Source of the DNA: Geosiphon pyriformis uo1
Taxonomy: Eukaryota; Fungi; Glomeromycota
NCBI GenBank assembly: GCA_016748015.1
Contig: JAAOMT010000096.1
Coordinates: 133,955 to 197,954, forward strand
Direction of reading: 5' to 3'
Length of the DNA stretch: 64,000 nucleotides
In this document: piece after piece, positions 35,001 through 60,222 of the stretch
Position numbering within the stretch: position 1 is the first letter of the stretch
Layout of the letters: every line of letters begins with the position of its first letter
The notes under the pieces: model-generated
Seen by the model: only the letters and a program-made list of their open reading frames with translations
The model's database searches: none
What the model was told of the DNA's origin: nothing
Program-made: the position numbers and the translations under genes

Positions 35001-35284
35001 TAAAGACCTTTAAAGATATTATGCAACTTACGGATGTTTTAGAGGGCTCAATAGTACGATGTATCACTCGACTTGACGAAACTTGCCGCGAAATAAGAAA
35101 TGCTGCTAGAATAATTGGTGATTCATCCTTATATAAAAAGATGGAAGATGCGCAAGGCTTGATCAAACGCGATATTGTATTTGCTGCTAGTTTGGTAAGC
35201 CAACTTTGTTTGAAGGAAATATTTATTTGTTTCATGATAATTTGACCCTATATATATATATAATGTTTTTTGTAGTATTTTTGA
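29022..35284 (+). CDS. SKI2: Ski2 (SKIV2L) DExH-box RNA helicase, cytoplasmic exosome cofactor; >20 short introns
   Basis: [31 protein letters not shown] (motif I), [17 protein letters not shown] (~31291), [10 protein letters not shown]-rich insert, [64 protein letters not shown] and C-terminal [17 protein letters not shown]. The long N-terminal extension and RG insert favour Ski2 over Mtr4. The ATG at 29022 and the 9-nt last exon (35276-35284) are inferred from splice signals. Confidence 0.93.
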
Positions 35285-37720: not shown

Positions 37721-39516
37721 CAGTCAGACCTCTATAAAAGAAGACAGTTGGGACATGCAAATAATGTTCCATTATAGAGGTGTTCTATTATAGAGTTTTA
37801 TAATTAAATAAACTAAATTTATTTATTAAATAAAATCAATTATTATTATTATTATTATTATTAAAATATTGATTAATTTTTACCTGTTTTTTAGAATTTT
37901 CCTTCATTTTTTCGTATTCATATAATTTTTTTCTAAGTAAATTTTGGTTTTCTATACTAAAATTTTCTTCTGCTAATTGCTCTTCAAATCTAATTACCTT
38001 TTTTAATGCTTCATATGCTTCTGTAATTGTAATTATAGCAGGTGGAGATTCTTCTAATTCTTCTTCCGAGTCATTAATTGTNNNNNNNNNNNNNNNNNNN
38101 NNNNNNNNNNNNNNNATAATTCATCAACTGCTACAGTATAATCTTCGAGATTTTTGACCAATTATTGTGCATTTGATGGTAAATTGTTGAATATATCCAT
38201 AGCAATTGATGTTTCGGATTCTTGAATTTCTAATTCTTGATTATAGAAAAGAATATCCGTTTTTTGCCAACAGTTTTGAATTGTAACAGATATTACTTGA
38301 AATCATGATTGAACAACATAATCAATTGCTTGTTTTATGTTTAATTTATTTCTAAAAAATAAATTAATATTAGATAAAATTATATAATCTATAATGATAA
38401 TAATACTGTATATATTATATTACTTAACTGTTCAATATTAATTTTTTGTTCAAATTGATGTAAAATATGTTGACAATATAAGTGCTTATATTTGCCTTTG
38501 AAAGATTTGATAATGCCAGCATCCATTGGTTGAAGATGTGATGTAGTATTTGAAGGAAAATAGTGCAAAGTAATATTGGTTAATTGGAATGAATCTTTCC
38601 CGATTTGAGTATGATGAGAAGTTGCATTATCAACCAAAAGTAATATATGCCGATTTTGAATTCGAAACCCTTTATTTATATATTTGAGCCATGCTTTCCA
38701 TATATCTGAGCGCATCCATGCTTTGGAATTGAATTTGTAAATCACAGGTAGGTTGGAAGTATTAATTCCTTTAAAGCATCTTGGATTTTTTGCATGTCCA
38801 ATTACTAAAGGTTGCAATTTGTGAGATCCAGTTGAATTTGTAGCAAGAAGAATTGTAATCCAAGATTTATCCTATAAAAAACCCAATTAATTTAATATAA
38901 CAATAATATATAACGATAACAATTGGTAAATATAATATACCAATTTTTTTCCTGCATTTCGACATTTTGCAAGTGTTTGATTTGGTCCCATACGAAAAAA
39001 TAATCCTGTTTCATCAGCATTATATATGTCAGCAGGATCAAATTCGGATATAATGGTTTTTAATTTTCTTCATTCTTCTGGTAAACTTTTAGTTGATACA
39101 CTTCCTGCTTCACCATGAAATCGGTAAACACATAACTGGTTTCGTTTTTTGAATTTTTGAATCCATCCATTTGAGAATTGCATTTCATTTTCGTGCATAC
39201 CAAGAAATTTGGNNNNNNNNNNNNNNNNNNNNNNNNNNNNNNNNNNNNNNNNNNNNNNNNNNNNNNNNNNNNNNNNNNNNNNNNNNNNNNNNNNNNNNNN
39301 NNNNNNNNNNNNNNNNNNNNAACATCTAGCACATGATATTTGTTCTTATATGAAGGTAAATTTCGAATAAATATTTGATAAAATTATGTTCTTGTTCCTT
39401 TATAGATTGTTCTTATATAAAGCGAAAATTGTTAATTAATCAATTGGTTCTATAAAAAAATGTTCCTTGTAAGAGGTTGTTCTTTTATCGAGGGTTCTTT
39501 TATGGAGGTCTGATTG
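37721..39516 (-). mobile_element. pogo/Tigger-family (Tc1/mariner) DNA transposon
   Basis: 22-bp TIRs at 37721-37742 and 39495-39516 (2 mismatches), with TA on both sides. Subterminal GTTCTT(T/A)TAT-like repeats at 39340-39500. Contains two N-gaps. Confidence 0.88.
37850..39212 (-). pseudogene. DDE_1/CENP-B-like (Tigger) transposase with introns, probably inactive
   Basis: Minus strand: DIYNADETGLFFRMGP, LATNSTGSHKLQPLVIG, NSKAWM, LLVDNATSH, HLQPMDAGII. GT-AG introns at ~38940-38872 and ~38423-38352. In-frame TGA (W>stop) near 38303 and an apparent frameshift near 39170. The N-terminus falls in an assembly gap. Confidence 0.8.
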
Positions 39517-39804: not shown

Positions 39805-40256
39805 ATGAAATATCAAAAGCTCACTCTCGGTTAAATAACATTAATTTTTATTGCCTGCCTTCTTGTTTTATCGACCGACGGTTTTGCATTTCCTGGTATG
39901 AGCAACTTTGTTGATTGATTGAGAATTAACCTGAAAAAAAATTTCCTTTGCGTTAATCACTCATGATACGGAATTTAAGAATCAATTTCTTTCATTTTTT
40001 TGTCAAGAAGATAAAAGAGAATGCGCACCAACACCCTGCAATAAAGCACTATGTACAGTTGTTCGTTGTGGATCCTCCAAAACAATGTGTATAGCGGTTC
40101 GTCCAAAGGGTTGCCCATGTCGCCAAGCTATTTGCGTGAATCCTGGTAAGTTAAGGGAAAACTTGATTTCAACAAATATATAGTAAGCCAGGATGATATA
40201 TCAAATTAATTACAGACGAAGAAATACCTAAAGGCTGGAAACCAAAAAAAAGCTAA
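39805..40256 (+). pseudogene. Secreted 8-Cys peptide gene A (3 exons), with in-frame TAA in the signal peptide
   Basis: Exons 39805-39895, 40008-40145 and 40216-40256 (GT-AG, phase 1) give MKYQKLTLG*ITLIFIACLLVLSTDGFAFPEDKR-ECAPTPCNKALCTVVRCGSSKTMCIAVRPKGCPCRQAICVNPDEEIPKGWKPKKS*. Stop at 39832-39834. Missed by the ORF track. Confidence 0.72.
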
Positions 40257-40323
40257 AGGCTGGAATATTGGGAGTTGGTAACAAACGGCTATGAATTTCC
40301 TGGTCGGCCTCAATAGTAGAAAG

Positions 40324-40328
<5 letters not shown>

Positions 40329-40416
<88 letters not shown>

Positions 40417-40417
40417 A
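40329..40417. repeat. (GA)n microsatellite with AA interruptions
   Basis: Directly visible. Confidence 0.95.
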
Positions 40418-40780
40418 AGTGGTTAGCTAAAGTGGTGCAAATTTTTTTTCTTTGATAATTCTAAAATTTACGATTGGTTAGTATCTATTGACTGGTTGAT
40501 TTCAAAAATAGATAAAAAAATTATTACGCAGCCCATTTTAAATAATCAAAAATAGCCCCTCAATCATATAAAAATCTATCGTAACGAGAAGAAAAAATCA
40601 GGGAAAAAAAATCCAAAAACTTCAATTTATTTTTCAAACCGAACAAAATTATATTCTACTTCTAGTAAGTTATAAATTTATCCCAGTTTATCATCTCACA
40701 AGAATCAATTGATAATATAAATGAATTAAATTAATTCAACACTTTGTCACTCTTTCTTAACTCTGTTCCTTTTTAAACAG

Positions 40781-41061
40781 GTCCTGCATGTATACAGTGT
40801 TTAATTGCTTCTATTTGTAAAGACTGCCCCGATGGCTGTTGTAAAGTGACTCACCCATGCAGTAGTTGTGTTAAGGTTCAATGTATTGCTTCAGGTGTTT
40901 GATAAAAATATTTTATTTTGAAATATTTTTAAAAGGATTTGAAATTCTTTTAATTATTATGAACTTAAATTAGGGTGGTAAAATGGGAATGGTAAAGGTT
41001 ACAGTCGGGAAAAAATAATAATAGCTGTGTAATAACCAGTACTAAAGATTTAGAGGTTTGA
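40781..41061 (+). pseudogene. Cys-rich peptide gene B (probable pseudogene)
   Basis: Exon 40781-40894 (AG/GT bounded) reads PACIQCLIASICKDCPDGCCKVTHPCSSCVKVQCIAS. The next exon from 40974 reads GW*NGNGKGYSREK.., a tail related to gene E but with an in-frame TAA. An upstream donor GTAAGT (~40664) and TATA (~40567) are present, but no ATG or signal peptide was found. Confidence 0.6.
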
Positions 41062-41893
41062 GTTAAAAAACAAAATACTTATACATTTACTTTTATTTAT
41101 TATGGTACTATGCCAAATTTGATAGATAACTACTGTACATTTAACATAATCTAAATTAGCCTTCACTGGGTTTAGAGATACTGTCATGAAAATTTTTGAT
41201 TATACTAAATAACACAATAAATTTCTCATCGTAACGTGACCACTCACAATATTAGTTTGAAATTTTACCAGCTCAAACCATTCGGGCCCACAGCATGACT
41301 AAATATGATCAGGTATAAAAATGAATGATTTGCTAGTAAAAAAATATGCTTCTTTTGAATAAAATTAAATTGCTAACTTAAAATTTAAAATTTTGAATGC
41401 TTTGGAATCCCATAGCTACTACTTCAATAATCTGCAGTTTCGATTGGGTGTTAAAAAGATTTTCTACTTATTTCAACTAAGGCTTAGACCGCAAGAATGG
41501 AGTAAGTTTTAGGAAAAATTAATTTTTGTTTCACCATTTTTTATGATGTTTTCTCGACCTCCAATTGTTTTGATTTGATCTTGCAAGATCATTAATGAAA
41601 ATACATGACAATTCTGAGGAATAATTTCAATTTTTCTTTTCGTAATCAATTCTTTACAAGCGATTCATAATTTTTAACCCTCCCCTCGAAATTGTATCAA
41701 TTAGCTTTTTTTTTTACACGTTTAGAACAATTTTCTAGGTAGAATTTGAACTAGCAATCGATTTGATGTTTCTTATTCTTTATTTATTCTATTTCATAAA
41801 GGTAACAGGTATATCTCAAATTTTTAAGATAGAACAAGTTTTACTTGATGGTCACAAAATAAAATGAATCTAAAATTCTTTTAGTGATTTAGT

Positions 41894-42368
41894 TCACATA
41901 TAGCTCCTCTTAGACGTTCCACGGATCCTACCACCCCTTCCTCCACCCCTTCCTCCACCTCTTCCTCCACCTCTTCCTCTCCAATTCGAATTACCCTGAT
42001 CTCTACACTCATAGCTTCCACAATCATTACAAGTTTTTGGAATATCTACGCAGGTTAGAGATGAAGAACACGGGTTAGATGAACAGTGGTCATATGTTGG
42101 ACATTCGGTGCACACGGCTATTTGGGGTAGTTTGGAGAAAAGCAAGAGGCAAAAAAATTTAAACATGAATTACAGCAAATCCTCTTATCGAGAATTTTAT
42201 TCAATGAAATTATAAGGGCAAGAATCAGAAAAAATTAAAAATTTTGTTACTTAATGGCTTTTGATCCAGCTCAGAAGTTGGATGGCTGTCGCAGACCAGG
42301 AAAATCAAGAGAAAAAACGAAAAGATTTTGAAAAGGAAGCTAAGCGTGATTTCATAAAATCCGTACAT
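41894..42368 (-). CDS. Secreted 8-Cys (Opy2-N-like) peptide C with RGG-repeat tail
   Basis: Exon 1 (42368-42251): MYGFYEITLSFLFKIFSFFLLIFLVCDSHPTSELDQKPL. Phase-1 GT-AG intron 42250-42118. Exon 2: TVCTECPTYDHCSSNPCSSSLTCVDIPKTCNDCGSYECRDQGNSNWRGRGGGRGGGRGGGRGGRIRGTSKRSYM*. Confidence 0.8.
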
Positions 42369-42869
42369 TTTTACAGAGAGAATTTCTTGTGAGTCTCAAA
42401 ATTTCAAAGGAACACTGATTAAATATCGTTAATGTGGAAAATTTTTTAATTAAAAGTTTGTCTTTGTTTGATGGTACATTTCTTTTGACCAAAGGATTTA
42501 TAGACTAATTAAGTCAAATATGAAGTACAACCTAATTGTTTTCTAGTTGAATTGCCATATAGAAACTATTTTCATATTATATATGATTCAAAACTCAATA
42601 TACCTTAAAGTCCCAAGAATAAGCAACCACTTAGATTAGGGAGTTGATTTTTTATTTTCAAAAATAGTAAACAAACAGAAGTACAAAATAAATAAATAAA
42701 CCCTATTCTAAAATTAAGTGTGTGTGATTCAAAACTTGATAAAAGATTATTTTATTATGATTATGATTAGGGAAACAATTTAACTTTGATTTTTTTATGA
42801 TATACAAACAATCAAATTATATAATTGAAAATCAAATATTTGTAGTTAGAAGACTAAAGGATAAAAATG

Positions 42870-42950
42870 TCCACCACTACCACCACCACCACTAATACCA
42901 CCACCACCACCACCACCACCAGCTACCATCAGCTACCACCAGCTACCACA
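42870..42950. repeat. (ACC)n-rich trinucleotide repeat
   Basis: Directly visible; produces the poly-Thr ORF at 42867. Confidence 0.85.
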
Positions 42951-43668
42951 ATAACACTCCTACTTCACGCAGCATCTCAGCACCAAATTGGCTCACCCAA
43001 GAAGCTTTTAGTATTAAATAATTCATTGCGGAACGATTCCCAACATGCAAGAAAATATACATTGATTACTTAATGCCTGTATTAACTCTTGTCATTAAAA
43101 AAGTATTCGTACGGTATGAAAAAATAATTATATGAAACTAATTAATTCCAAATAATGTCATCGGAATCATTTTGAAAAAAAAGAAAGGGTCATCACATTT
43201 TGGATAATTTGCCTAATATTATTTTTTTTAAACTAACCATTGTTTCTAATGAAATATTAATATATATATTAAATTTTTATTAAAAGTTATTTTTATACAG
43301 GTGGTATATTGAATTGTTAAGAGATTTAAAAGTAATGCTTTTTTTTTTTCTTTAAAAAATTTCAAAATGAAATCATTTATTAAATTTTTTGTCATAATGA
43401 AATCATCTATTAAATTTCAACTCTTGATTAGTTCAAATAAATAAATAAATAAATAAATAAATTTTTTTTTCCATGCATTTAAATGAATGAGAAGTTTACT
43501 AAATTTAATTTTCCGTTAGTACCACGTGTTTCAGAAGATTTTAAATAAGGTACCCATTATTCGATAAATTAGTGGTTTAAAAATTATTAAAAATTGTCAA
43601 ATTTTTCTTTTAATCAAACAAAACAGACGGATTTTCTAAAGGTTGAAAATAATAGGCTAATAATAGGC

Positions 43669-43703
<35 letters not shown>

Positions 43704-44914
43704 GTCTTATATCTTTATGTTTTAATAAGGTTTTAAATAATTAAGGGGATGAACAAATTGTTTTGAATTTCAGGGTTTAAATTGTATTACATAATGCTTC
43801 AATGAATGCCTTATATTGTGAATTTTGGGATTCGAAGATCTAGTCACGCAGCATGATTTCTTACACATGATATGATTTGCTTAGAATCTCAAACAAAGAT
43901 TGTTACACTAACGTAAAACTTACGAATTAAAAGCTTTAGGTATAAAATACAAGATCTGAAAAAAAGATTTAGATCAATAAAGAAAAAACTTTCATAACGG
44001 AGGATATTTTTATCATTGATTTGCTGCTTCAAGATTTTAGGTGACACATTTGATGGAAAATATGATAAAAAGCTTTAATTTCTAAATATAAATTAAATCT
44101 ATTCCAAAAAAAGAATTTTCTCGGAGCAGATTTCATACCTTTTAAGAAATAAGCGTTAAATAATAACGGATAAATAAGCATAAAAATTAACCGACATACT
44201 TTTATTTTGGGAACACCGTATTTAAGAAAGTATAACGGAAATGAGCTTTTTTAATTGTATTCGTTAATTTAAAATTTTTTAGAATTCATGGAAGCTTCTT
44301 TAAATTTTGTATAGGTTCAAATGGTATATTATTTTTTATCCAAAACATGAGATATTTGCTTTAAATTATTAATATAAAATTATTTTGTTATCTAATAAAG
44401 GAATAAAATCAACTTCTAAACTATTGATGAGAATATTGAGCATTAAAAAATAAATTTTTGGAAATCAAAGATTTCGAAACTTTTTCTATTTATAATCTTT
44501 ACCAAAAAATAATAATTTATTTTTCGAATTTTAATAGATCCAAAAAAGAATCAAATAATATAAAGAAAATTTTAAAAATAATTTTCTTATTTTAAACTGC
44601 ATTTTCACATAATTTTGATTCTTTCTTTTTAATTAAAAAATTAGGATTAAAACTAATTATAATTTTCTAAAGAAGAGTTACTCAATCACCAAACATTTTA
44701 TCTGTTCAAAATTAATCAATTTCAAGGTCTTTCTTTTTTAGGAAAAAATGGCTGATTGTGGCTTCTTTGTTGATCTAAAAAGCCATCAAAGTTTGACTTC
44801 CATCATCATGATGGTATTGTAAATTATAAATTGTTAAATATCCTGATTGAAAAAATTCGTGTCAAAAACAAATTTCTTTTATTTTTGATTCAAAATAATT
44901 TTTCAACTAAAATT

Positions 44915-45319
44915 ATGAAAATTCACAATTTATTCATTGAATTATATTTTAACATCGTAATAGTTATACTGTTATGTATATTTTTCATGGTAAACTACAC
45001 GCTATCAAATCGTTACAATCAACAATCAAAATTAGGTATAATTGATATTACAAAAAAAAATATACTTTTTAAAATCTCTAAATACTCAATTCACATTCTT
45101 ACCTTTTTTTTTTTTTTTTTTTTTTTTTTCTTAGTATCTCGTTGTCTATTACTCGACCCTTGCCCAAAGAATCCACCACAATGTGATCCTCACTGTGCAT
45201 CAGATGAATTATGCGTAATAGTAAATCCTTATTGCAGGTGTCGAACTTCTGAATGTCGAAAAATTGACACTATACCAAAAATAAAGCCATCATGGGAGCC
45301 TAAAAGATTAGATGAGTAA
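44915..45319 (+). CDS. Secreted 8-Cys peptide D
   Basis: ATG at 44915 with a hydrophobic leader. 99-nt GT-AG intron at 45036-45134 with a poly-T tract. Then VSRCLLLDPCPKNPPQCDPHCASDELCVIVNPYCRCRTSECRKIDTIPKIKPSWEPKRLDE*. Confidence 0.8.
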   Translation: MKIHNLFIELYFNIVIVILLCIFFMVNYTLSNRYNQQSKLGIIDITKKNILFKISKYSIHILTFFFFFFFFFLVSRCLLLDPCPKNPPQCDPHCASDELCVIVNPYCRCRTSECRKIDTIPKIKPSWEPKRLDE

Positions 45320-45975
45320 TAGTTGAATTATATCAATCTTTATCATGAGACTCAATGAGATAAGCTCTATAAAATTCTTTTGGTGAGAGGGGGGACGCAA
45401 ATGATTAGTTTCTTTGTTATAATTTTTAACCTTGAACTTTTAATAGCTTTTATTGATTTCTATAAATTCTTCTTTAAACAATCATACTTTTTCTGGAATA
45501 GTAATTAATTTTGGGACATTATTGACATTATTGACATTATTAAATTAAATATTTATATTAATTAAAGATGATTTTTATCTCGCAATCAAATTTGTTGTGA
45601 TAAACGTATTTCACAAGTTTAGCAAAAAAATCATGGAGATTGATTCCAAAAATATCTCTTTAGTACAAATATATAAATATTTATTCAATTAAAAAAATGC
45701 CTAGTATAGAAAGATACCTTGAAAACAAAAAATTAAATTCTTAAACACTTTATTACTTTATTACTTGACCAAACTAAATTTTTCTCATGAGAATTAATTT
45801 AATTTCTAAATATTTAATTTTATCCAAACAAACAATAAAAACTAGGTCCAATGTAATTAAAATTGCTTTCCTGGATAAAAAAATAAAAATAAAAAACCTA
45901 CTTGATCTTTAATGTTTATTTCTCAATTATTAAATGATGTGGAACATTACTTAATAGCAAGAAATTCTAAACCCT

Positions 45976-46014
<39 letters not shown>

Positions 46015-46502
46015 CTTTTTTTTTAAAATTAANNNNNNNNNNNNNNNNNNNNNNNNNNNNNNNNNNNNNNNNNNNNNNNNNNNNAGATAGGAGATTTTAC
46101 TATTTCAGTTTCATTAATTTTACAAGTTATTCTTTGTCTCACAGAAAACTCAGATTTCTTTCATTTATAATTAGTACAACCTCACCCCAAGATAACAATT
46201 GGCTTCCTCAAAGAGTTTTCCAGGAAATGTAGGAGGTTAGCAACTGTATGATCAAAAGAATGAAACATGCTTCAATAAACTAAACTAAACTAAACTAAAG
46301 TCAAATACATATGGTTATTAATAAATATTTTATTAAAGAAAAAGTTTCTTTTCATGACTTCTCATTAAGATTTGATTATAAAAGGAATTGTACTTCTTTG
46401 GTCAGCCAAGATTTTAGCCTTCCGTTGTCAAATTTACTGAGGTTTTAATTTTATCATCGTTCAAATTTTAAGAAATAAGAAAGCGTATTACCCCTTGAAA
46501 AA

Positions 46503-47087
46503 ATGAGATTAATTGTGGCAATTAGTTTCTTCTTTGTTCTTGTTCTCTTTGAAAGAACTTATTCAATAGCTTTAGAAGGGAATGATTGCGTAATCTGCAC
46601 CCAACAGGTCCCACAATGCCCAGCTACTTGTCCAATGAATCAAGAATGTACAATCATTGGGCAAACGTGCACTCAATGCTCACGAGCGGTCTGCCAAAAC
46701 TCATCTACCGATCCCCCCAAAGAAGAGCCTGATCATGTTGCTTGTGTAAATTGTTTGGTCGGATGTCCACCGAATTATTGTAAAGGGGGCTTGGTCTGTG
46801 TGGTTGTTGGCGCTGGTTGTAATAGTTGTGGGCAGGCTGTTTGTCAGCCACCAGGAGTGAGTATTATTATTATTATTATTATTATTATCCATCGTAAAAA
46901 TTTTGTTTTCAATTAATTAATTCAGCTTTAATTTATGTGTCTTTAGAATGATGGGAAAGGAAATGGTGGGAAAGGAAATGGTTGGAAAGGAAATGGTTGG
47001 AAAGGAAATAGTGGGAAAGGAAATGGTGGGAAAGGAAATGGTTGGAAAGGAAATGGTTGGAAAATAAATGGTTGGAAAAGGAAATAA
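46503..47087 (+). CDS. Secreted protein E: two 8-Cys Opy2-N-like modules + (NG[G/W]KG)9 tail, 164 aa
   Basis: Signal peptide MRLIVAISFFFVLVLFERTYS. Module 1 is CVICTQQVPQCPATCPMNQECTIIGQTCTQCSRAVC. Phase-0 intron at 46857-46946 (GTGAGT..TTAG). Exon 2 reads NDGKG NGGKG NGWKG NGWKG NSGKG NGGKG NGWKG NGWKI NGWKR K*. TATAAAA at ~46377. Confidence 0.85.
46947..47081 (+). repeat. 15-bp coding minisatellite, 9 units (AATGGT[G/T]GGAAAGGA)
   Basis: Directly visible; in frame with gene E after splicing. Confidence 0.92.
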
Positions 47088-50000
47088 AGTCACATTTAGC
47101 TGAGAATAATATAATTTTATATACTTATAGTATTTCGATACTAATTCCTGCTTATAGATTACTTTAAAATTCCTACCTGTTATAAATCTCCATATTGTAA
47201 AAAGGAGAAAAGAAAGTTTCAATTTTTTGTATCTAGATTATAAGATTAATATTGCTCAAAAGTTTTTGGAAAAGAAAATTTTGATCATTTGTCTAATTAT
47301 AAAATATTTTTAAATCCTTGAAATAATTCAAGTTTAATTATTTACATTATTAATGAAAATAAATAAAAATTTCAAGTTGTTTATCATTTGATAAATGTAA
47401 TTTACTTTAACTTTTTATCATTAAATTAAACAGGCTAAGTATGCTTATTTTAAGTTAATGATATTTTCTTTATATTTTTTTTAAAAATTTCTATTCAATC
47501 TTGTAAAATCAATCTTTGACTGGTTCAGAATTCGTGATGCGAATCAAAAATCATTTTTTTTTAGAAAAAACTAGCAATAAATTATCCTTAATTTGATTTT
47601 TATATTAAAAAAAAAACAAATTAGGACTTGAAAAATTTTCGATATAATCAAAATAACTCAAATAATGTGTGTGAAAACTTGACTGAAATTCTTGATTTGG
47701 ATAAATTAATTGTTTTTTTTTTAATTTCATTTTAGCTCAAAAAAATAAATCAATTTTGGTTACCTCAAAATAAAATTTCGTTATTTGATCGGAATTATTG
47801 AAAACTCAACCTTTAATATTATTTTAAATATATTGTTTAAACTACCATTTATTTTTAAATCAGATATTTTAAATTCCGAGTAATTAAGGAAGAAAGAAAA
47901 AACCAGTTATATAACTGAGGATGGGAGTAGGTGTATGTTTATATAGAAGATCTTTATTTAAACTATCAAAACTTTTCCTAATTAAAAACAACTATTAGTA
48001 CCATTAATTCTTTCTTAATAATTTACATCGAAATTTTTTAGATTGAATTTTTGCCATGTTTTAAAAGAAGCGATATACTATCATTTCGCATATTAAATAA
48101 CTGTTTATTACTTTTGATAGATTTTATAAGAGCTATATCTTATCGAAAAGATTCTTTTGCAAAAATTCGATTATCAAGTTGCTTCCAATTAATGTTTGGG
48201 TAAAACATAGTTTTCGGAATTGACATTTTTAATAAAAGATCTTGAAGACGAGCAAAAATATCTGATTGTATATATATATATATATGGAAATTGTGATATT
48301 CGAATTTCACTTTGTGTATGTCGTTATTTTTGATAGACTTTATGTATCAAATATATAAATTGACCAAATAATTAATCTCATTATTTAAAAAAAAATTAAA
48401 AAGAAAAGCAATTTTAAATTAACAAGTATTTTATTTGATCTTAAATATTTTAGTGCTTATTGTAAAATACTGAATGCAAATCAGTTTTATGCTTAAGAAA
48501 CTTATGATAATCTATTAAAAATATAATTAAGAGTAAAGTTAATTTGCTTAAAAACTTTTTTTCAAATACTATTTATTATTTAAGATTATATAAGATGAAA
48601 TTTTTTAATTAAACATGAAGCACAAACAAACTAACAGAAGTGCTAAAATGCATTAATAATAATAATAATAATAATAATATAAATAAATTGTTTTTGAACA
48701 AAGCTTTGGATTTGCAACTAAAGAAATAATTAATTAATAGTCTTTTTGTTAATATTCGTTAAACTAAGAGCAAATTTTGTTGAAATTTGATTGGTTCTAA
48801 TATTGGTTGTTAAATAGATATGCCATGTTTTTTAGTAAAATCTTGCCAAATTTAGTTTTTTTTTTTCAAGATTATGCATTGGTTTTAAAGAGTTTAATGA
48901 ATCTTGACCTTTAATAAACAAAAATTTGCTTAAAAAATTAGATAATAAAAGTAATATGAGTATATTATAGACATGTTTAAAAGATTGAAAAAATTAGACT
49001 TCAAAAGTGTCATGCCTGGTTTTTTTAACCATTTTATAAAATTTTTAGATAGTAAACATTGTCACTCAATAAATTGTTATTTATATCTGAATTAAACATT
49101 TAGTGTTTAAATAATGAGCAAATTTACATAATGGTTTAGTAATAAATTGGGTGACAATAATGTGTCGTATAAGGCTACAGTTTACTTTCAAGAGATTAAT
49201 AAAAAATTAAATGCCCCTTTAATAATATTGTTTTTCCACTTTTACTGAATTGAAAGATATTATCGTGGGTTTTTTATGTATTCCAAGAGGTTTTTGTTTT
49301 AATATATTGTTAAATACTCAAGCTATATTAGAAAAAAAAGAATAGAATTGACAAATCACATAATGTTGTTTTGGAAGATAGGGTCATGTTTAGGATAAAT
49401 CATTTGAATTATTTTCTGGTCAGACTAATTAAAGAACATATTAAATTAAAATATATTTTTACAATTGTTTATTTATTTTTTTATATTTCATAATTTTGTC
49501 TATTGCAAGTGGTTTTTCTTCAAGTTTTTAAGAAGCAAAGGGATAAGTTGGGACAGAATGGTGGATAAATAAAACGGATAGTACCGGGAATAAATCAGAA
49601 ATTTGGTGAAACTAGTGGTAAACAAGATTGACATTTATGCATTGGTTTTTTTTTTTGAAATTTGGAAACACAATAAATTTTGCATAAAAATATATTTGTT
49701 TTTGAAGAATTTTAAAGAAACCAGTTTAGATTATATAATTAAATAATACATAATTGAATACTAACATTATTAAAACTTATAAAAAATTTTATATTTTATT
49801 GTTTTTGATACATAATTTAGTTTTAAGTAATTTTCAATTTAAAAATAATTTATTTTTTGGAAATCAAATTTAAATGTGATTTGAACTAAGATTTATAAAT
49901 AAATTGAGTTAAAATTATACCTTTTAAGAAATCATTATTTAAAATCTTTATTTGATTCAAAATAAACTATATTTTAATACACTAATAATAAGTTTATTAA

Positions 50001-51029
50001 CATAATGCCTGTGTCAATAAAAAATATATTATCATGATAAAACTGCAAAATTTATGATTATTATATTACAAATTAATTCAAAATTAAAATTAAGAATTTT
50101 TTTTAAGTTTAAAAAAATGTTTAATGATCGAATTAAAAAATCAGACCCCAAATCAATTTAAGCGATATAAAATTGAGAAACTCACTTTATATTCTACTTA
50201 ATTATAAAATAATAACAACTATTATAGTAGTTATTCTTGGATTTCATGAGAGCGTTCAAAAAATATCAACGAAACTGTTAAAAGAGAATTTGGTATGGTT
50301 CATTGTGATTTACACTAGAACAACATCTTACATGAAAAAGAATACCCATTTATGATATATTAGTATTTATAATAAATTAATAAAACTATATATATTTTAA
50401 AAAACTCGAATATATTTTTTTGCTGATTTAAAATTATTAATTGATTGATTGATTGATTGCTTTTTTATGATTAAGAATGCTCATTTATTTAATTCTTTTC
50501 TTTGTCATGTGAGAACTGGGATTAGAGATAGATTTGCATGCATTTAATAAAAACAAAAAATCAAAGGTGTGGAGTTTTTTATTGTAGATATGTCCTTTTT
50601 TTTCGATACAATTTCAATACAAAGTGTTTTTCATTTTTCTTTTTGAACAGTTTTTTTTTTAAATGAAATGAAATGAAATTCAATATAAATAAATCATTGC
50701 TTAACTTTTCAAACTTTGAAATTTATTATCTTTTAAAAATATGAAAAAAAATACTTTTCAAATAAAATTATTTCAATATAAAAAATTATTATTCAATTTT
50801 TTTGTGTAATATCTCTTTAGTATTTTATTTAATACAATTGATTCAATAAAATCTTATACAAGTTATCTATAGTGAAATATTTAAATTTAATTCTTAGAAT
50901 AAAAATTTTAAAATGATGAAAATTCAAAATATTTTATGAAAAGATAAAAGCAAAAGCCTTGATATGCTTAAATAGTAAAAACCTTTATTCCCTTTATACT
51001 TCTTCAAAAAACGAAGTGTATGATAATAG

Positions 51030-51726
51030 CTATCCCAAACTGGTTTGAAAAAGTTTCTTTAATGTTTCATTCTCTTTCTTGAGTTTTTCTATTTCTTCTT
51101 TCAATTGTATAATGAAAAATAAAAGTGAGTTAATTCAATCAAAATTTTCTGCTTGGCCTTGACTGTTAATCCTCTGATCCGTTAAATTCAAATCGGGGAT
51201 AGATGTGAAGGATTGATTTTGTTTCAAGGTAATAAAAGCGGTTGATTATTTAGCGTGAAGATTCCTGGTGTATTATCTGTCACGATCAATTCATCAAGAA
51301 GTGGGTTCGTAATGTCTTCAAAATTTTGAGTATCCAAAGGATCAAAGGAGGAAAAGTCTCCTGAGAAAGATTCAAAAAAAGATTTTTCAAATGAAGCCTA
51401 GTTTGAATTTAAATCTTTCATTAAAAATATTTTTTGCATTTTGCATTCTTAACAGATTCTGGTTCTTCCTTCCATAATTGACCAGCAATTGATGAAACTT
51501 TTGACATGTCAATTGAAATTTTTTTGGCTTTAATCTGAAACGTGTAGTTCTTAAGGTAAAGAATAAAAGCATTCGCAGGTTTAGTTGGGGTTCTTCCTTT
51601 GCGCGTAACTCATGGAACTAGGTCATTAATAGTAAGAAGAGGTGGATAAGTTGGTTTGAATGAAATTTGAATTAGCCCATTTATTGTGTCTGAAGTGGCT
51701 TGAAGAGAATCATTTTGAGGTAACAT
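51030..51726 (-). pseudogene. MATA_HMG-type HMG-box transcription factor pseudogene
   Basis: MLPQND..KPTYPPLLTINDLVP*VTRKGRTPTKPANAFILYLKNY..(frameshift)..MSKVSSIAGQLWKEEPESVKN, then a C-terminal coiled coil QLKEEIEKLKKENETLK..LG*. Stop at 51610-51612. Confidence 0.8.
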
Positions 51727-52459
51727 ATTATTATTATTATTATTATTATTAAAAGGTTTTTTAAGTAAAGTGATTATTTCGATTCAAGCGATCTAATGAG
51801 TAAAATTTACGTGTTCAAGGTTGTTCGATTTTATAAGAATTTTCGTATAGAAGCGACGCATATATACTTTGCGCGACTGTGTAACGATTGGTGGGTGGCG
51901 CAAATCATTCAATGGTTGAGACAAAGCAACTTTTGTGTACGACGGGATTTTATTTTGATGGTAACTTTTGTAACCGGTAAAGAAATTAGCCCTCATAGGT
52001 CAGAATTTGGTTTTTAAATACTCAAAACTTTCAAGCGGCAAACTTGGTGTTTCCTTATTTTTGAAGTTTGTGGGTATTTGTCCATTTTTGAGCAACTCAA
52101 ACAAATCGTTTTTGGCTTTTCGAAAAACTTTTCCCACCATAATAAAGTTGATGATTCTTAACTAAACAATTAAATTAAAAGACGTTCACAATCACAAAAT
52201 AAAGTGCCGATCGACCTTTTAAACTAAAATTTATCTAATTTCCCCACTGTTATATATATATATATGACAAATTTTGGGGGCTGCTTCAGACTAAATAAAA
52301 TTCGTTCAAACGTGCCTGGTTTGCAGATAAAGATATTTTTATTATACAGTCAATTATTTTAAGAAAATATTTTAGTGCACGTGAATATCTAAGAAACGAG
52401 CGTTGTCAACCTCTAGTAATAATGTTATTCGGGCTAGTAAAAACGATCTCAAATTTTTA

Positions 52460-53735
52460 TGAATGGTATATTTTTTTCACAAAGAAATTAAATTAATTAA
52501 TTAAAATAGCATTAATAATTTCTCTTTTGTACAAAAGAGAAATAAACAAGAGTAGAGTTACAGAAATCCACATTACTAGACCAATCACTATCTGAATGGC
52601 TAGCATATTTTCCTGAGGTGACCGAAAATGTTGATTCACAATTGTGAAAAGATGTAAAATTGTTATTCCCTGAGTTAGTTCAAGAGCACTTTGAATAAAC
52701 CCTTCAAATGTGAGAATTAATAAAATTATATTTGCTGAACATGATCTTGGTGTGGAAGATTTTTACCTAAACATTTTTATATTTTTAGTAATAAAAAATA
52801 AACCTCAAATTATATTTTAGCTTTCAATAATAATATTTATTATTTGTTCAATATAATGGCATACGCTTCAATTGCTAGTTTTTAGTAGTAGGCAATTGAA
52901 ATGTATATATATAATCATACAAGAGAAACCTTGGCCTGAAAATTAATTTCGGCACAGTTAATCAGGATATCGTTACTTTTGTAGCTTCGAAAGTTGGGAA
53001 TAAGGAATTTTGGTGTAAGACTGAATAAAGTAATCTACCATTACCGAATCATCTATAGAAAATGGAGTGGAAAATTTTTGTATTGAAATATGGATCGAAC
53101 TATTAAACACATGTGATTATCCAAAGGATCAAAAGATATAGATATATTGTGATTGTGATTGTGATTACACTGAGCTTGAAACGGGGAAAACAAAGACAAA
53201 GCTGGATTGCTAGAATATATTCTGATGAGAATAAGGTTCAGCACACATTTATCCAGTTATGAAAAATTTTTATCTTAGAAAACTGAAAAATTTGTGATAT
53301 TTATTTTAGGAATGTTACTTTCCAGCATTCATAATATAGTTCAATGTGATTTTCTAATCACTTTTTTATATTTCTCTAATTTGATCATTAGACAATTGTG
53401 GTTCTATCAACATTTCAAAAAGTATTCTTTCTCTAGTTAGGTTTCAAAACATTATGCTCATGTGGTAATCTTGTTCCGATTTTCAACTGAGTGAACAACC
53501 AGAAAGAAAATCATGGATTTTGTTTTGACAGAACTCAGAGTAATGAAATTGTGTAGAAATGATAATGAAAAATTATTAAACAACAATTTTGAATATCTAC
53601 AGTTAGATTAGATGATGAAACGGGAATCTAAAAATCTTCTAAATAAAGATAACTACATTTTGATGAATGTACATAGGCCCAAAAATAAGAAATGTTTTAG
53701 ACTTTTGATACTTTTGGTATCAATTTTGGTCACAA
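52460..53735 (+). pseudogene. Possible decayed class-3 lipase-like gene
   Basis: Scattered fragments in plausible order: MAYASIA ~52856, NGVENF.IEIW ~53061, GNLVPIF ~53464, HGF ~53512, VH..GP / YF-GINFG ~53669-53730. The catalytic GHSxGG motif is not visible. Confidence 0.3.
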
Positions 53736-53968
53736 TCGTTTTATAAGTGTGGAGATATTTTTTAATTTAGCTAATATTGGAGCCTTTTCTTGTTGTATTT
53801 TTTCGAATACAAATGTAGCCTCAAATGTGCTTAATGTAAGTGTAATAGAGTCTTGATCTGTTTGAATAGCTAGTCACTCATGAGAAAATGTGTGATTCAT
53901 GTTTATTTTAGACATGTACATGTATTAGGCTAGTAAATTGTAAAAGGGCTACACTTATTAAGCATTTA

Positions 53969-54034
53969 CCGTATTTACTCGCTCCCATCTGATTTTTCAG
54001 TAAATTGGGAGTGCTTATTCCTGAGTAAATACGA
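53969..54034. mobile_element. 66-bp mini-MITE, Tc1/mariner(pogo)-like termini
   Basis: TA-CCGTATTTACTC...GAGTAAATACGA-TA (12-bp TIR, 1 mismatch), plus an internal CTCCCA/TGGGAG inverted pair. Confidence 0.6.
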
Positions 54035-54143
54035 TAAATAAATCAATAAAAAATTTAAATATATATAAATTTAAATCTTAAAAATTACAATTTTAAAATG
54101 AATTTTTAAACTTAACACTTATTTCCAATGAAATATTAATATA

Positions 54144-54582
54144 CAGTCTGGGACAAAAAAAATGGAAATCTAAATAGAATTTTTTAAAAAAAATTCTAAA
54201 TTATTTTATTAAATATTATCAAGTAAACTTATTTATTAGCTTCTCAATAATATACAATTAAATTTTTATTAAAGTCTAATAATTATTGATTATACAATTA
54301 ATAAAAATAATATGATGACTTTTTTACTTATAACTTTTTTTAAAAAAAAAATTACATTTTTTATTAATTATTTATATATAAAAAATTGAAAAAATACTTG
54401 TAATATATATTTTATAATTACTTTTTTTCATCTTTAAAAAATAGTTAAAAATAAACCCATTTATTTTTTATTAAAACTGTTTTAAATAAACTTATTCATT
54501 TAATATTAAACTATATTATTTGAATAGATCTTTATTAGATTATAATTAAAATAATAATTTCCATTTTTTTTGTCTAAAACTG
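54144..54582. mobile_element. Tc1/mariner-type MITE (439 bp)
   Basis: 26-bp TIRs at 54144-54169 and 54557-54582 (3 mismatches, all transitions), with TA flanks. The empty site is visible in the paralogue at ~43250-43285. Confidence 0.88.
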
Positions 54583-56476
54583 TATATATATGAAAATTTA
54601 TTAAAAGCTGTTTTGAATTTGTAACTAGTTAAAATTTTTGAAATTTCAAAATATTATTTTTATTTTTAATTAATTTAATTAATTTTATCAATTTTTGATA
54701 TTATAATAAAGTTTAATGTCATGTTTTTAAAATGCAAAAATCTTTTTTTTTGGTTGTATTTAATTTAATTGAATCCAATTAGTTGATTAAAGAAATTTAT
54801 ATAAAAAGTATTTACAATTGATTTGTTTTTCTTATAAAATAGGTGAAGTAAAAGTTTAAAAAAAATTGTTTTTTTATTGAAATAACTTAACAAAGATCCT
54901 TAAATAAAATTGCAGATTCTTGAAAAAAGAATGATTTACTTAACAAACAAAGCTAACATTTTATCAAATAAATAAAAGAAACTTGAAAATTTTTTTTAAG
55001 CACTCCTAAATAACTATTGAATAGAGATTAATCAATTGTTTTTTTTATGCAAGTGGTATATTGAATTGTTAAGAGACTCAAAAGTAATGGTTTTTTGTTT
55101 CTCTGAAAAATTTCAAATATCTAAAATTATCTAAATTATTTTTAAAAAATTAATATCGAAATTATGCGTTTTCTTTATCTTAATGAAATCATATATTAAA
55201 TTTCGACTTCTAAGTTTGATGGGTTTTTTTCTGCATTCAGTTAGTTCAAATGAACTTTCCTAGCAAAAAACCCTCATCGTAATTATAAAATATTTTTCTC
55301 CTGCTTTTGCTCGCCGCAATTAAATCAATTAAAAAGTTGCTAAATTAACTTCCCATTAGCACCGTGTATTAGCAACACAAATACGTAAATTTCTAGAATG
55401 TCTTAAATAAGATACCTATTATTCGACAAATTGGTGCTTTGAAAATAATTAAATAGATAGAAATAAATGTTTGCCATATTTGACTAAATCGTTTTTGAAA
55501 ATGGTTAACTCTTTTTTCAATCAAACAAAATAGACGGATTTTCTAATTAAAAATAATAGGCTAAACATATTCTTATTATTATTATTATTATTATTAGTCT
55601 TATATATTTATGTTTTAACAAGTTTTTAATTATTAGAGCGATGAACAAATTGTATTGAATTTCAGGGTTTAAATAAGTATTAGATGACGCTCCAATTTTA
55701 ATACAAACTTACATTTCATTAAGCCGCAAAAGATGCCTATTTTTAACTCTCGAATGTCTTATATTGTGATATTTTATGGTAGATTCAGTCATTTAGAAAA
55801 TATGATTAATAGCCTGTCTCAGAATGAATTAAGATTGATTTTTTATATATGGTATAATTCGCTTATTTTAGGTTAGAATCTCAAAATTATAAAAAATTAA
55901 AAGCTTTATGTATAAGACCGAACGAGATAGCTATAAATATAAAATTTTAAAAGATGAGATCAATGAATAAAGAACTTCACAACGGAGGATATTTTTACCC
56001 TTGATTTGCTGCTCTCGATTTTCGGTGACACATTGAGAGAAAAAAACGATAAAAGCTTTGATTTCTAAATACGAATTTAAATCTGTTCCAAAAATAAATT
56101 TTCTCGGAGCAGATTTCATACCCTTAAGCGCTAAATAATAACGGATAGATAAGCATAAAATTAACCGATATACTTCTCTTTCGAGAACAACACCGTATTG
56201 TGGTCACCCCGAGAAGATGACAATTGGCTGCCTGATAAAAGAATGAAAAAATGCTTCAATAAACTAAACTAAAGTCAAATACATATGGTTATTAATAAAT
56301 ATTTTATTAAAGAAAAAGTTTCTTTTCATGACTTCTCATTAAGATTTGATTATAAAAGGAATTGTACTTCTTTGGTCAGCCAAGATTTTAGCCTTCCGTT
56401 GTCAAATTTACTGAGGTTTTAATTTTATCATCGTTCAAATTTTAAGAAATAAGAAAGCGTATTACCCCTTGAAAAA

Positions 56477-56965
56477 ATGAGATTAATTGTGGCAATTAGT
56501 TTCTTCTTTGTTCTTGTTCTCTTTGAAAGAACTTATTCAATAGCTTTAGAAGGGAATGATTGCGTAATCTGCACCCAACAGGTCCCACAATGCCCAGCTA
56601 CTTGTCCAATGAATCAAGAATGTACAATCATTGGGCAAACGTGCACTCAATGCTCACGAGCGGTCTGCCAAAACTCATCTACCGATCCCCCCAAAGAAGA
56701 GCAATGTTTAGCTTGCTCAAAAATATATCGACCTTGCCCAAAATGTCGTAAAGGCCATATCTGCGTTCGTCATCCTCAAACTTGCAACAAGTGTGAAACG
56801 GTCACATGTGAGCCAGATGTTTCCCAGCCTGATCATGGTGCTTGTGTAAATTGTTTGGCTGAATGTCCGCCGGATTATTGTAAAGGGGGCTTGGTCTGTG
56901 TGGTTGTTGGCGCTAATTGTAATAGTTGTGGGCGGGCTGTTTGTCGGGCACCCAAGAGTGAGTAT

Positions 56966-57001
<36 letters not shown>

Positions 57002-57094
57002 TATCCCATCGTAAAAATCTTGTTTCAATTAATTAATGGAGCTTGAATTTATTTGTGAATTTCGTTTCTTTAAGAAGGTGGCAAAAGAAGTTGA
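56477..57094 (+). CDS. Secreted protein F: three 8-Cys Opy2-N-like modules + short basic tail
   Basis: ORF from 56477 with signal peptide and 24 Cys. The donor GTGAGT at 56958 (phase 1) and acceptor at 57074 give ..CRAPKKGGKRS*. The unspliced form would stop at 56968. Confidence 0.88.
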
Positions 57095-60000
57095 ACTAAA
57101 GTCTCATTTAGCTGAGAACAATGAAATTTTGCATATTTATCCAAGACTTGGAGCGAATAAAAGTATTTCGATACTAAAGAAAAGGTTTAATTCTCAATAT
57201 CTAAAGTATAATATTAAGGTTTGTTAAAAAAGAAATGTTCATTTTGTTTTAAATCCTTGAATAATTCAAGTTTTAGTTATTTACAAATAAACCAAGATTT
57301 CAAGTTGTTTACCATTTGATAAATGTAATTAGTATCATTACTTATTTTAAAGTTAATAACATTTCTTTATATTTTTAAAAAATATATTAGATTTTGAAAA
57401 TTTCAAACTTTAATTCATGAAGCTAATCAGAAATAGAGTTTGTTTACAGGAAAACTAACAATAACTTATAAAATAAAAATCTTAATCTGGTTTTCATATT
57501 AGAAAAAATAAATTTGGTCTTGAAAATTTTCGATATAATCAAAATAACTCAAAAAAGAGTTAAAATTCTTTATTTGGATATATGAATTATTTTTTAATTG
57601 GTTTTTAACTCAATCTTTCATATTATTTAAATCAACATATTTTAAATTCCAAATAATTAAGTAAGAAAAATAAAAACATTTGCATAAGCGATGATAAAAC
57701 TGTTGTTTACAGCTGAATTGACACTGATTGCGATTGTTTATGTAGAAAAAACAATACTGGTTGAAGACTCAAAAGTAGTGTTTTCAGTTTCAAAGTTCTT
57801 AAAAAAAACAAAATTGTTGCTTTTGGGAATACTATGAAGAAAAACTATTTTTGGTATTCCAAAGAAATTGGCTATTACTATTATAATAATTGCATTTGGT
57901 CATATCAAAGTAGTCATGATAGTAGTAGTAGTAGTTGTTGTTGCAGTGTGTTAAAAAAAACACTTTTATCTGACTGTTTTTACTACTAAAAAAAATTCTT
58001 GGTTGTTGCTTTCTTAATTATAATAACAAAAATAGTAATTGCTTTTTTTTTCTCTTTGTTTAAAATTAAAAGATAAGAAAATTATCATTTTTTGTTTAAA
58101 TTATTGCAAAATTAATAAAACAATATTTGAATCAATTTTTTCATTTAACATAGTAATTTATAATTAAGATAAAAGAAAAAGTAAATTAATTATTCGAAGA
58201 AATAATTTTATATATTTTAATACATTTTTATTTTGGTTTTAGCTGAAATTCTATCAGCTTATTTAATTATTATTATGACAATAATAATAATTGATGAATA
58301 ACTAGAAAAATGAATAATTAAAAAAAAATAATCAATGAAAAAATAATTAACTGAAAAATAAAATTTTTTGTAATGAAATAATTAAAAGTAACAATTAGCA
58401 ACATTTTGTAAATTAAAATAATTGAAATAAGAGAATAAATAATTATTAGAATTAATTTGATAGAAAAATAAATATACAATAAATATAATTTGTATTTTTC
58501 AGTTTTTAAATTTAACGATTTATGAATAATATAATTAAAATTGAATTACAAATTTATATTATATACATTATTTTAAAAATTATTATAAAATAACTTTTAC
58601 AATAAATTATTTGATATACTTAATACAAAAGCTATATTATTAAAACTAATCATAAATTTTGTAAAAAAAATTATTACAATTAATTACAAAATGATTTATT
58701 AAAAAATTAACTTTTTTATTTTTTTATTTAAATTTGAAATTAAAATAATTTTATCATTATTCAATATATATATACTGTTCTTTATTATAATAAATTTTTA
58801 TAGTTTTTAAGTTGTGACTTTGTTAATTTCAATTAACTATAGCTTTAAATAAAAAAATAAATTTATACCTATTTATTATATTTGTTACAGTTTATTTTGA
58901 AATAATATTTTGTCAAAAAAATAAAAATAAAAAATATAAACCACTTTTTTAAAATAAAAGTCTTATAGTTAAACTTTATTTTTTTGGCATCAAAACATTG
59001 TTTTCACTTCCTAAATTTTGTCGTCAATAACTTAGTCTATAGAGCAAGTATTTTGCTTCGTGTCCTTTAGAAGGGTCCCTATTTACTAAATTTGTTATAT
59101 TTCCTCATTACTGAACAATGTTACCGTGAAAATTCCATTCTCGATTTGGTACACAGCAGTCGCCATATCAATTATCCCATATTGGGTATTGCATCGGAGC
59201 ACGACTTAATTTAATAAATGAACAAAGCTGAGTTTTTTCAATTCAAGGGACGTTTTTCGAGCATAGTGGGCAAATAATAAAATTTCTTCAATTAAATAAC
59301 TATATCAGTATCGATTTATAAGGGTTTAATTTACTAAGTTTGTCAACTTGCTTTGCTTAAACACCCATCAAAAAACGAATATATCAATAAGAAAAGAGGA
59401 GAATGTTCGAATTTTGAGGTATAATACCTTTTATTTTCCCACCATAAATATGCAAGTTGCTAAAATTCAGGTTGTCCTCTAAACTTTTGGCTAGCAAATA
59501 AAATTTAATTATATAAAAATTGTGCAATTTCAAGTTTTTTGAACAATAGAAATACTTTAACCCTGTATTTTCCAAGAAAAACCAGTTTCTTAAAGAGAAC
59601 TAAAATATCATTATGGTTTTACCCACAAGTACATACATTTTTCATAGATGTACATAGATGTAATTACACATGTTAAAAATACTATTATTTTCGCAAGTAA
59701 ATGTGTCTATTATTTTCACCATCAAATTTACAGCGTAAATCAAATATTATAATATGTACAAAAATTTTTTCCAATCCTATTTTGAAGCTATTTCTGAAAA
59801 AGTCCAAATTGATTTTCAATTTTAACATTCAAAATAGTTTTATATTATGTTTGCTTACGAGAACAGTTTGCGCTAGAAATTTCTCTTATTTTATGCAACA
59901 TCCAATTTAGTAAATCTAAAAGCGACAAAATTTTAGATGTGAATACCAAAATTATTGTATCACTGTAAGAGAAGGATATGGGAAAACTTAATATCATTGA

Positions 60001-60222
60001 TTTTGTAAACAGGTATTTTATAAACAATCCTTCCATTGACAAATATTGTTGCAAAACAAGAAATGACTGTTTTAAGATCAGGTTAACAGGTTTTTATTTG
60101 AGCGAATCCTGTTTGTCAAAGAAAAAGATGAAGCCTATAATTACCTAACGTCGAAGTTCGAGCGAAAATAAAGAGGTTTTGGCACGCTATAATTTTTTTC
60201 AAAATTCGATTTTTCTGCCATA

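What the first reader, a model, noticed from the sequence alone, without database searches (positions are those of the whole stretch)
39805..57094. Cluster of six secreted 8-Cys (Opy2-N-like) peptide genes with interchangeable cationic tails
Seen: genes A-F share a module of about C-x2/5-C-x4/6-C-x2/4-C-x4/6-C-x6/7-C-x1/2-C-x4-C in 1, 1, 1, 1, 2 and 3 copies (B has a ninth Cys). All but B have a signal-peptide-like leader, none has a downstream transmembrane helix, and each has a different basic, Gly- or Trp-containing tail. A and B are absent from the ORF track and the others are mis-bounded by introns. Knowledge: the spacing matches the extracellular Cys-rich domain of fungal Opy2, which in yeast is membrane-anchored and binds the signalling mucins Hkr1/Msb2 in the HOG pathway. 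Inference: this is a birth-and-death family of soluble Opy2-like modules that may act as effectors, antimicrobial peptides or mucin-binding decoys. It is the best candidate in the window for an undescribed system.
Basis: partly seen in the sequence, partly recalled or inferred. Interest (0 to 1): 0.85.

Follow-up and report, generated by a model that had tools for sequence, protein, structure and literature searches.

The report
Secreted Opy2-domain peptide gene cluster, Geosiphon
The cyanobacterium-hosting fungus Geosiphon pyriformis has copied a small cysteine-stapled domain, known from a yeast membrane sensor, into a fast-changing family of secreted peptides; this stretch holds four intact genes and two dead copies, one gene appears as a spliced transcript, and what the peptides bind is untested.

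Summary
The nine eight-Cys modules are real (none in shuffles). The genome is Geosiphon pyriformis. The E and F modules are Pfam Opy2 (PF09463) members; B, C and D are divergent relatives; A is doubtful. A and B are pseudogenes (early stop and frameshift; deleted start and leader). The tails are not interchangeable: they are subfamily-specific and change by local repeat growth. A-B-C is a three-gene cassette copied to at least five other contigs, and different copies have lost different members, so birth-and-death is supported. A run that behaves as RNA holds E spliced exactly as predicted, ending after its Gly/Lys/Trp tail with no anchor exon. Module exons diverge about 2.4 times faster than leader exons and at least as fast as introns. 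The genome keeps one membrane Opy2. Anchor-less Opy2 proteins also occur in Rozella, Syncephalis, Basidiobolus, chytrids and Mycena, so the architecture is not unique. Best reading: secreted, diversifying surface-binding peptides, probably aimed at microbes; not shown. The gap is intergenic, unbridged by contigs, but colinear with the F duplicate. The scan noted similar genes elsewhere in this genome.

The parts
39805..40281 (+). Gene A, pseudogene: leader exon 39805-39895 with in-frame stop at 39832-39834; module exon 40008-40145; tail exon from 40216, frameshifted (stop at 40256; relic of the paralogues' frame ends at 40281)
   Evidence: intact paralogues on C385 and C617
40600..41032 (+). 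Gene B, pseudogene: 72-nt deletion at about 40658/40659 removes start codon and most of the leader; module exon 40781-40894 (nine Cys); tail exon from 40974 with a stop at 40979-40981
   Evidence: intact paralogues on C385, C727, C404, C644
41894..42368 (-). Gene C, intact: leader exon 42368-42251, intron, exon 42117-41894 with one module and an Arg-Gly-Gly repeat tail
   Evidence: exon 1 covered at low depth by run X2; intact paralogue on C617
44915..45319 (+). Gene D, open reading frame: leader exon 44915-45035, exon 45135-45319 with one divergent module and a short, weakly basic tail; single copy; lies in about 2 kb present upstream of E but absent upstream of F
   Evidence: no transcript seen
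46033..46084 (.). Assembly gap, intergenic between D and E
   Evidence: not bridged by a listed contig; flanks colinear with the F unit
46503..47087 (+). Gene E, intact and seen spliced: exon 46503-46856 (leader and two Opy2 modules), intron 46857-46946, exon 46947-47087 (tail of about nine 15-nt units, 11 Lys/Arg, 5 Trp, 18 Gly)
56477..57094 (+). Gene F, intact: exon 56477-56957 (leader and three Opy2 modules), predicted intron, short basic tail exon 57075-57094; if unspliced it ends at 56968
   Evidence: outside the stretch on which reads were laid
46286..46728 (+). 443-nt tract identical to 56260-56702 (promoter, leader, first module) inside a duplication otherwise 68-88% identical; probable gene conversion
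   Evidence: E-specific junction present in a run X2 contig with no mismatch
43286..47922 (+). Left copy of the duplicated E/F unit
55038..57695 (+). Right copy of the duplicated E/F unit

Best explanation
These are members and relics of an expanded Geosiphon pyriformis family of small secreted proteins: leader, one to three disulfide-stapled Opy2-type modules, and a short low-complexity tail, with no membrane anchor. Shown: the gene structures, the splicing and end of E, spread by segmental and tandem duplication, loss of different members in different copies, and fast change of the module between fixed cysteines. Inferred: they are secreted and folded by four disulfides; the module is a binding surface for an outside partner that itself varies; the Gly/Lys/Arg/Trp tail adds electrostatic and aromatic attachment to anionic surfaces. 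The most likely partners are microbial surfaces (soil bacteria or the Nostoc partner), so they would work like defence or recognition peptides rather than like the yeast signalling anchor.
For: Conserved leader with variable cysteine framework: module exons 17.1% diverged against leaders 7.2% (p 2e-5) and introns 12.8% (p 0.04) in four intact paralogue pairs. Pooled pN is about equal to pS, with dN/dS 1.5-1.9 in two of five pairs. This pattern is typical of defensin-like families (own knowledge). Cassette duplication with reciprocal loss. E spliced without an anchor. Basic Gly/Trp tails in C, E, F and in intact A types, and a Trp-rich basic module pair elsewhere in the genome. The canonical membrane Opy2 is kept separately.
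Against: No activity, localisation or partner is shown. The pooled dN/dS near 1 also fits relaxed constraint, and module divergence equals that of all non-coding flanks pooled (p 0.73). Whole mature products are only mildly basic, and some paralogues have neutral or acidic tails. No solved antimicrobial fold matches (best a WAP domain at Z 2.0). Soluble Opy2 proteins occur in fungi with no cyanobacterial partner.
Confidence: 0.42

Rival explanations
1. They are components of the fungus's own wall, spore or bladder surface: the module binds wall proteins or glycans and the basic tail anchors to acidic wall polymers.
For: Anchor-less and GPI-type Opy2 repeat proteins occur across early-diverging fungi. 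A conserved, syntenic anchor-less pair is kept in very gene-dense eukaryotic contigs beside housekeeping genes, which suggests an old housekeeping role outside the cell.
Against: Frequent pseudogenes and fast module change fit a structural protein poorly.
Confidence: 0.27
2. They are soluble decoys or modulators that bind the HMH/SEA region of Msb2/Hkr1-type mucins, in Geosiphon or in competing fungi, and tune HOG or filamentation MAPK signalling.
For: This is the only known ligand class of the domain (PMC13233613; 10.64898/2026.05.06.723240). Several carriers are parasites or grazers of fungi (Syncephalis, Rozella, Planoprotostelium; lifestyles from own knowledge).
Against: No Msb2/Hkr1 homologue was tested for in Geosiphon. 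The modules are far from the genome's own membrane Opy2 and from each other. The tails are not explained.
Confidence: 0.15
3. The family is mostly passenger DNA: small genes carried along by segmental duplication in a repeat-rich genome and drifting, with only a few functional copies.
For: Two of six genes here are dead, and at least four more in other cassette copies. A DDE transposase relic lies just upstream. Pooled dN/dS is near 1.
Against: Cysteines, splice sites and phases are kept while other codons change, leaders are conserved above intron level, and E is spliced.
Confidence: 0.11
4. They are small protease inhibitors with a WAP-like four-disulfide core.
For: The only structural row reported is half of SLPI bound to trypsin; Opy2 repeats are inserted in an aspartyl-protease-fold protein of Cutaneotrichosporon.
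Against: Z 2.0 is noise level, and only 1 of 59 modules touches Pfam WAP, at E 0.81.
Confidence: 0.05

Closest known systems
Opy2 extracellular eight-cysteine (CR) domain, Pfam PF09463; yeast Opy2
   Same: Eight-Cys spacing; Pfam score over cut-off for E and F; predicted fold like the Atlas Opy2 cluster (TM 0.75)
   Different: No transmembrane helix, no cytoplasmic Ste50-binding tail, one to three modules, many paralogues; the true orthologue is a separate gene on C669
Uncharacterised anchor-less Opy2-domain proteins of other fungi and protists (e.g. KAI8056026.1 Syncephalis, EPZ32938.1 Rozella, KAJ7195207.1 Mycena pura, KAK9693758.1 Basidiobolus) and Geosiphon KAG9291968.1, KAG9291976.1
   Same: Leader plus one to several Opy2 modules, no anchor; 34-54% identity to F
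   Different: Most lack Gly/Lys/Trp tails. The two contexts checked in Mycena and Rozella show single genes and Syncephalis a pair, not a multi-gene cassette copied around the genome
Host cysteine-rich symbiosis and defence peptides (legume NCR, aphid BCR, defensins, crustins); functional analogy from own knowledge
   Same: Conserved leader, variable cysteine framework, clusters, pseudogenes, cationic Gly-rich extensions
   Different: Different cysteine pattern and no sequence or structure match; no activity shown here
CFEM domain proteins
   Same: Fungal extracellular eight-Cys module found in both anchored and secreted forms; a resemblance to Opy2 is stated in 10.64898/2026.05.06.723240
   Different: No CFEM Pfam hit in any module; the module is about 35 residues with a beta-hairpin, not helical

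Membership tests
Opy2 domain PF09463 | Score over the curated cut-off (22.1 bits) | tested here: met
   E 36.4 and F 54.1 bits; B-type paralogue on C404 27.2 bits
Opy2 domain PF09463 | Cut-off reached by modules A, B, C, D of the window | tested here: not met
   C 11.1, D 14.3, A and B no hit
Opy2 domain PF09463 | Remote homology of divergent types beyond cysteine spacing | tested here: inconclusive
   hhalign probability: B type 97%, C type 84%, D 84%, A type 49%. With cysteines held fixed, D, E, F and intact B types beat all 300 shuffles; intact A types beat 95-98%; window A, B and C do not clearly
Opy2 domain PF09463 | Same fold | tested here: met
   F module 1 model pLDDT 90, best Atlas row the Opy2 cluster at TM 0.75; both are predictions. 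The A-type model was too poor to use (pLDDT 61)
Opy2 domain PF09463 | Four intramolecular disulfides | not testable with these tools
   Eight conserved cysteines only
Opy2 membrane anchor proteins | Single transmembrane helix after the module | tested here: not met
   No anchor exon; E transcript runs from module into tail; present only in L001
Opy2 membrane anchor proteins | Cytoplasmic Ste50-binding tail | tested here: not met
   Products end 5-46 residues after the last module
Opy2 membrane anchor proteins | Binding to the Hkr1/Msb2 HMH domain | not testable with these tools
   Known for yeast (PMC13233613)
NCR/defensin-like antimicrobial or symbiosis peptides | Family cysteine pattern or fold | tested here: not met
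   No Pfam, PDB sequence or PDB fold match
NCR/defensin-like antimicrobial or symbiosis peptides | Conserved leader with fast-changing mature region | tested here: met
NCR/defensin-like antimicrobial or symbiosis peptides | Activity on bacteria or symbiosis-specific expression | not testable with these tools
   One RNA-like run only, stage not given
WAP four-disulfide core / CFEM | Profile or structure match | tested here: not met
   WAP E 0.81 in 1 of 59 and Z 2.0; no CFEM hit

The most novel reading that the evidence does not exclude
Geosiphon turned the mucin-binding domain of a fungal stress sensor into a family of host peptides that recognise, restrain or reshape its intracellular Nostoc partner, a fungal parallel to legume NCR and aphid BCR peptides.
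Probability: 0.13. Interest if true: 0.82.

Novelty: new variant of a known kind. Interest (0 to 1): 0.4.

Why it matters
The Opy2 domain is described only as part of a membrane sensor; my paper searches found no account of secreted forms. Here it is shown to be a portable secreted scaffold across fungi, expanded to some thirty loci in the one fungus known to engulf cyanobacteria, for which no recognition or control molecules are known (own knowledge). E is a small, transcribed, easily made candidate for testing. Without a function it remains one more secreted cysteine-rich family in a repeat-rich fungal genome.

Tried and rejected
Six functional genes: rejected, A and B carry several lesions each. 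An A-to-B spliced two-module gene was considered because the phases match, but the only leader (A exon 1) has an early stop, and paralogues show A and B as separate genes with their own leaders. E as an assembly chimera of F: rejected, a run X2 contig crosses the E-specific junction without mismatch. Tail shuffling: rejected, no tail is shared between subfamilies. A hidden anchor exon: rejected for E by the contig; not excluded by reads for C, D, F. PDB sequence search, Foldseek, VIA second look and the Atlas feature search gave nothing usable. The module tree was unresolved (9 of 49 branches supported) and cannot show whether the family came from the genome's own Opy2. A word-based search with the membrane Opy2 found nothing. 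Yamamoto 2016 was not held. All searches were exon by exon by reference; searches and folds of joined spliced products were left out, and breaks were read as X. SignalP and DeepTMHMM were not available; leaders were judged by eye from their hydrophobic cores.
Full report
Observation. Spacings vary: the modules of C, E and F begin C-x2-C and end C-x6-C-x2-C-x4-C, while A and D have x4 or x5 at the start and x1 near the end. Every predicted intron has GT..AG ends and the phases of neighbouring exons agree.

Organism. Two proteins named Geosiphon pyriformis (KAG9291976.1, KAG9291968.1) have exons that occur letter for letter on contig C549 of this genome. The genome is 128.3 Mb in 792 contigs against 129 Mb in 795 scaffolds published for G. 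pyriformis (PMC9453076). That this fungus houses Nostoc in bladder cells is own knowledge.

Domain identity. E and F pass the Pfam Opy2 cut-off (36.4 and 54.1 bits against 22.1); C and D score 11 and 14 bits; A and B have no hit. Against a profile made only of non-Geosiphon soluble modules plus the genome's membrane Opy2, hhalign gives 97% for the B type, 84% for the C type and D, and 49% for the A type. With cysteines held fixed and other residues shuffled, D, E, F and all intact B types beat every shuffle, the C617 C type beats 99%, intact A types 95-98%, and the window's A and B are no better than chance. The AlphaFold model of F's first module is confident (pLDDT 90, one beta-hairpin) and its best Atlas match is the Opy2 cluster (TM 0.75). 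No solved structure matches.

Two genes are dead. A, B and C form a cassette (A and B on one strand, C opposite) found again in whole or part on C385, C617, C727, C644, C404, C700 and C635. Against these copies, window A has an in-frame stop at codon 10 and two deletions in the tail exon, one shifting the frame. Window B has lost 72 nt that hold the start codon and most of the leader, and stops at the second full codon of its tail. Other copies have lost other members: C is frameshifted on C385 and C727, B is truncated on C617, A is broken on C644. Intact A and B types keep the same three-exon, phase 1/1 structure. This is direct evidence for birth and death.

E, F, D and the gap. E and F lie in a duplicated unit (43286-47922 and 55038-57695, mostly 68-88% identical) with a 443-nt tract of full identity covering promoter, leader and first module; E lacks F's middle module by a 126-nt deletion. 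The gap at 46033-46084 is intergenic. No listed contig bridges it and the DNA-like run has no depth at 45914-46287, so continuity is not shown by reads. The two sides do match consecutive parts of the unbroken sequence upstream of F (43962-44222 to 55949-56199, and 46249 onward to 56233 onward), with about 2 kb extra that carries D. One contig (44000-45093) ties D's first exon to the left side. No reading frame depends on the gap.

Expression. No run is on record as RNA, but X2 behaves as one: it covers only exons and untranslated ends, and its 461-nt contig 10 lies on 46431-46852 and 46947-46981 with four letters between. Since 46431-46856 is 426 nt and 426 plus 35 is 461, the predicted intron 46857-46946 is removed exactly. 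The contig has no mismatch across the E-specific module junction and a second contig continues through the tail. This is my reading of the piece table; the joint table did not list it because rows at repeats were dropped. E is therefore a real spliced gene that passes from module to tail without an anchor, and not a chimera of F. C's first exon is covered at depth about 9; D is not covered, which proves nothing. A, B and F were outside the stretch laid. X2 holds 0.28 of the words of the F region, about what the shared tract alone explains.

Tails. E's tail is about nine copies of a 15-nt unit, homologous to the five-codon tail of F and found nowhere else in the genome. C-type tails are Arg-Gly rich in both intact copies, A-type tails repeat a Pro-Lys-Gly-Trp-Lys motif, and B-type tails start Gly-Trp but range from basic to acidic. 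So the tails share a composition and change quickly by local expansion and indels, but are not exchanged between subfamilies.

Evolution. In four intact pairs, module exons differ at 17.1% of sites, leader exons at 7.2%, introns at 12.8%, all non-coding flanks at 16.5%. dN/dS per pair is 0.3-1.9, pooled near 1 even with eight fixed cysteines. This fits diversifying selection on the residues between cysteines but does not exclude relaxed constraint.

Wider family. The genome has one membrane Opy2 (module, transmembrane helix, long tail; C669) and roughly 25 further module-bearing loci outside the window, a lower bound and not all modelled. Anchor-less proteins with a leader and one to six modules occur in Syncephalis, Rozella, Basidiobolus, Clydaea, Blastocladiella, Mycena and the amoeba Planoprotostelium, and as a syntenic pair in gene-dense eukaryotic contigs of unknown organism. 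No named hit came from another arbuscular mycorrhizal fungus, but many hits are unnamed and the searches are not exhaustive. Paper searches found no description of secreted Opy2-domain proteins; the yeast domain binds the HMH/SEA region of Hkr1 and Msb2 (PMC13233613; 10.64898/2026.05.06.723240).

Mechanism. Shown: gene anatomy, duplication and loss, splicing of E, fast change of modules. Inferred: secretion, four disulfides, a variable binding face, and a tail that sticks to anionic surfaces. I put microbe-directed binding or defence at 0.42 (of which a Nostoc-specific role 0.13), own wall or surface component at 0.27, mucin decoy at 0.15, passenger DNA at 0.11, protease inhibitor at 0.05.

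Limits. Searches were made exon by exon by reference; searches and folds of joined spliced products were left out. Broken genes were read with X at the break.

Verdict. A real, partly expressed, fast-evolving secreted family on a known domain in a new architecture and context; function open; interest 0.40.

Noticed in passing
window 51424-51609 (-): HMG-box exon (PF00505, E 1e-8) between E and F, of the MATA-HMG-like kind common in these fungi; the reading frame looks interrupted after it.
   Followed up: partly
window 38200-39200 (-): DDE_1 (pogo/Tigger-like) transposase relic directly upstream of gene A (E 4e-31), next to gaps at 38082-38115 and 39213-39320.
   Followed up: partly
window about 30800-35900 (+): Intron-rich DEAD/DEAH helicase gene that looks like SKI2.
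   Followed up: no
window about 59500-64000 (+): Long multi-exon gene with no clear Pfam match in the exon tested.
   Followed up: no
L054 (C597:261822) and L058 (C643:278055): Pair of single-exon secreted proteins, 131 and 135 residues, with an acidic spacer and a very Trp-rich, basic Opy2-like module; dN/dS 0.40. Best antimicrobial-like candidates in the family.
   Followed up: partly
P0011 and P0004: Aspartyl-protease-fold, GPI-type proteins (Cutaneotrichosporon and an unnamed relative) with three Opy2 modules inserted and apparently no catalytic motif; yapsins cut Msb2 in yeast, so the module may bring them to mucins.
   Followed up: partly
L083/L084 10001-10976 and L082 2872-3237: Conserved anchor-less, basic Opy2-domain genes in fixed synteny with Evr1, a WD40 gene and MFAP1 in very gene-dense eukaryotic contigs (microsporidia-like density; organism not determined).
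   Followed up: partly
window 42868-42935 (-): Run of Gly codons (GGT repeats) in a GC-richer patch between C and D; possibly a relic of another Gly-rich tail or a simple repeat.
   Followed up: no
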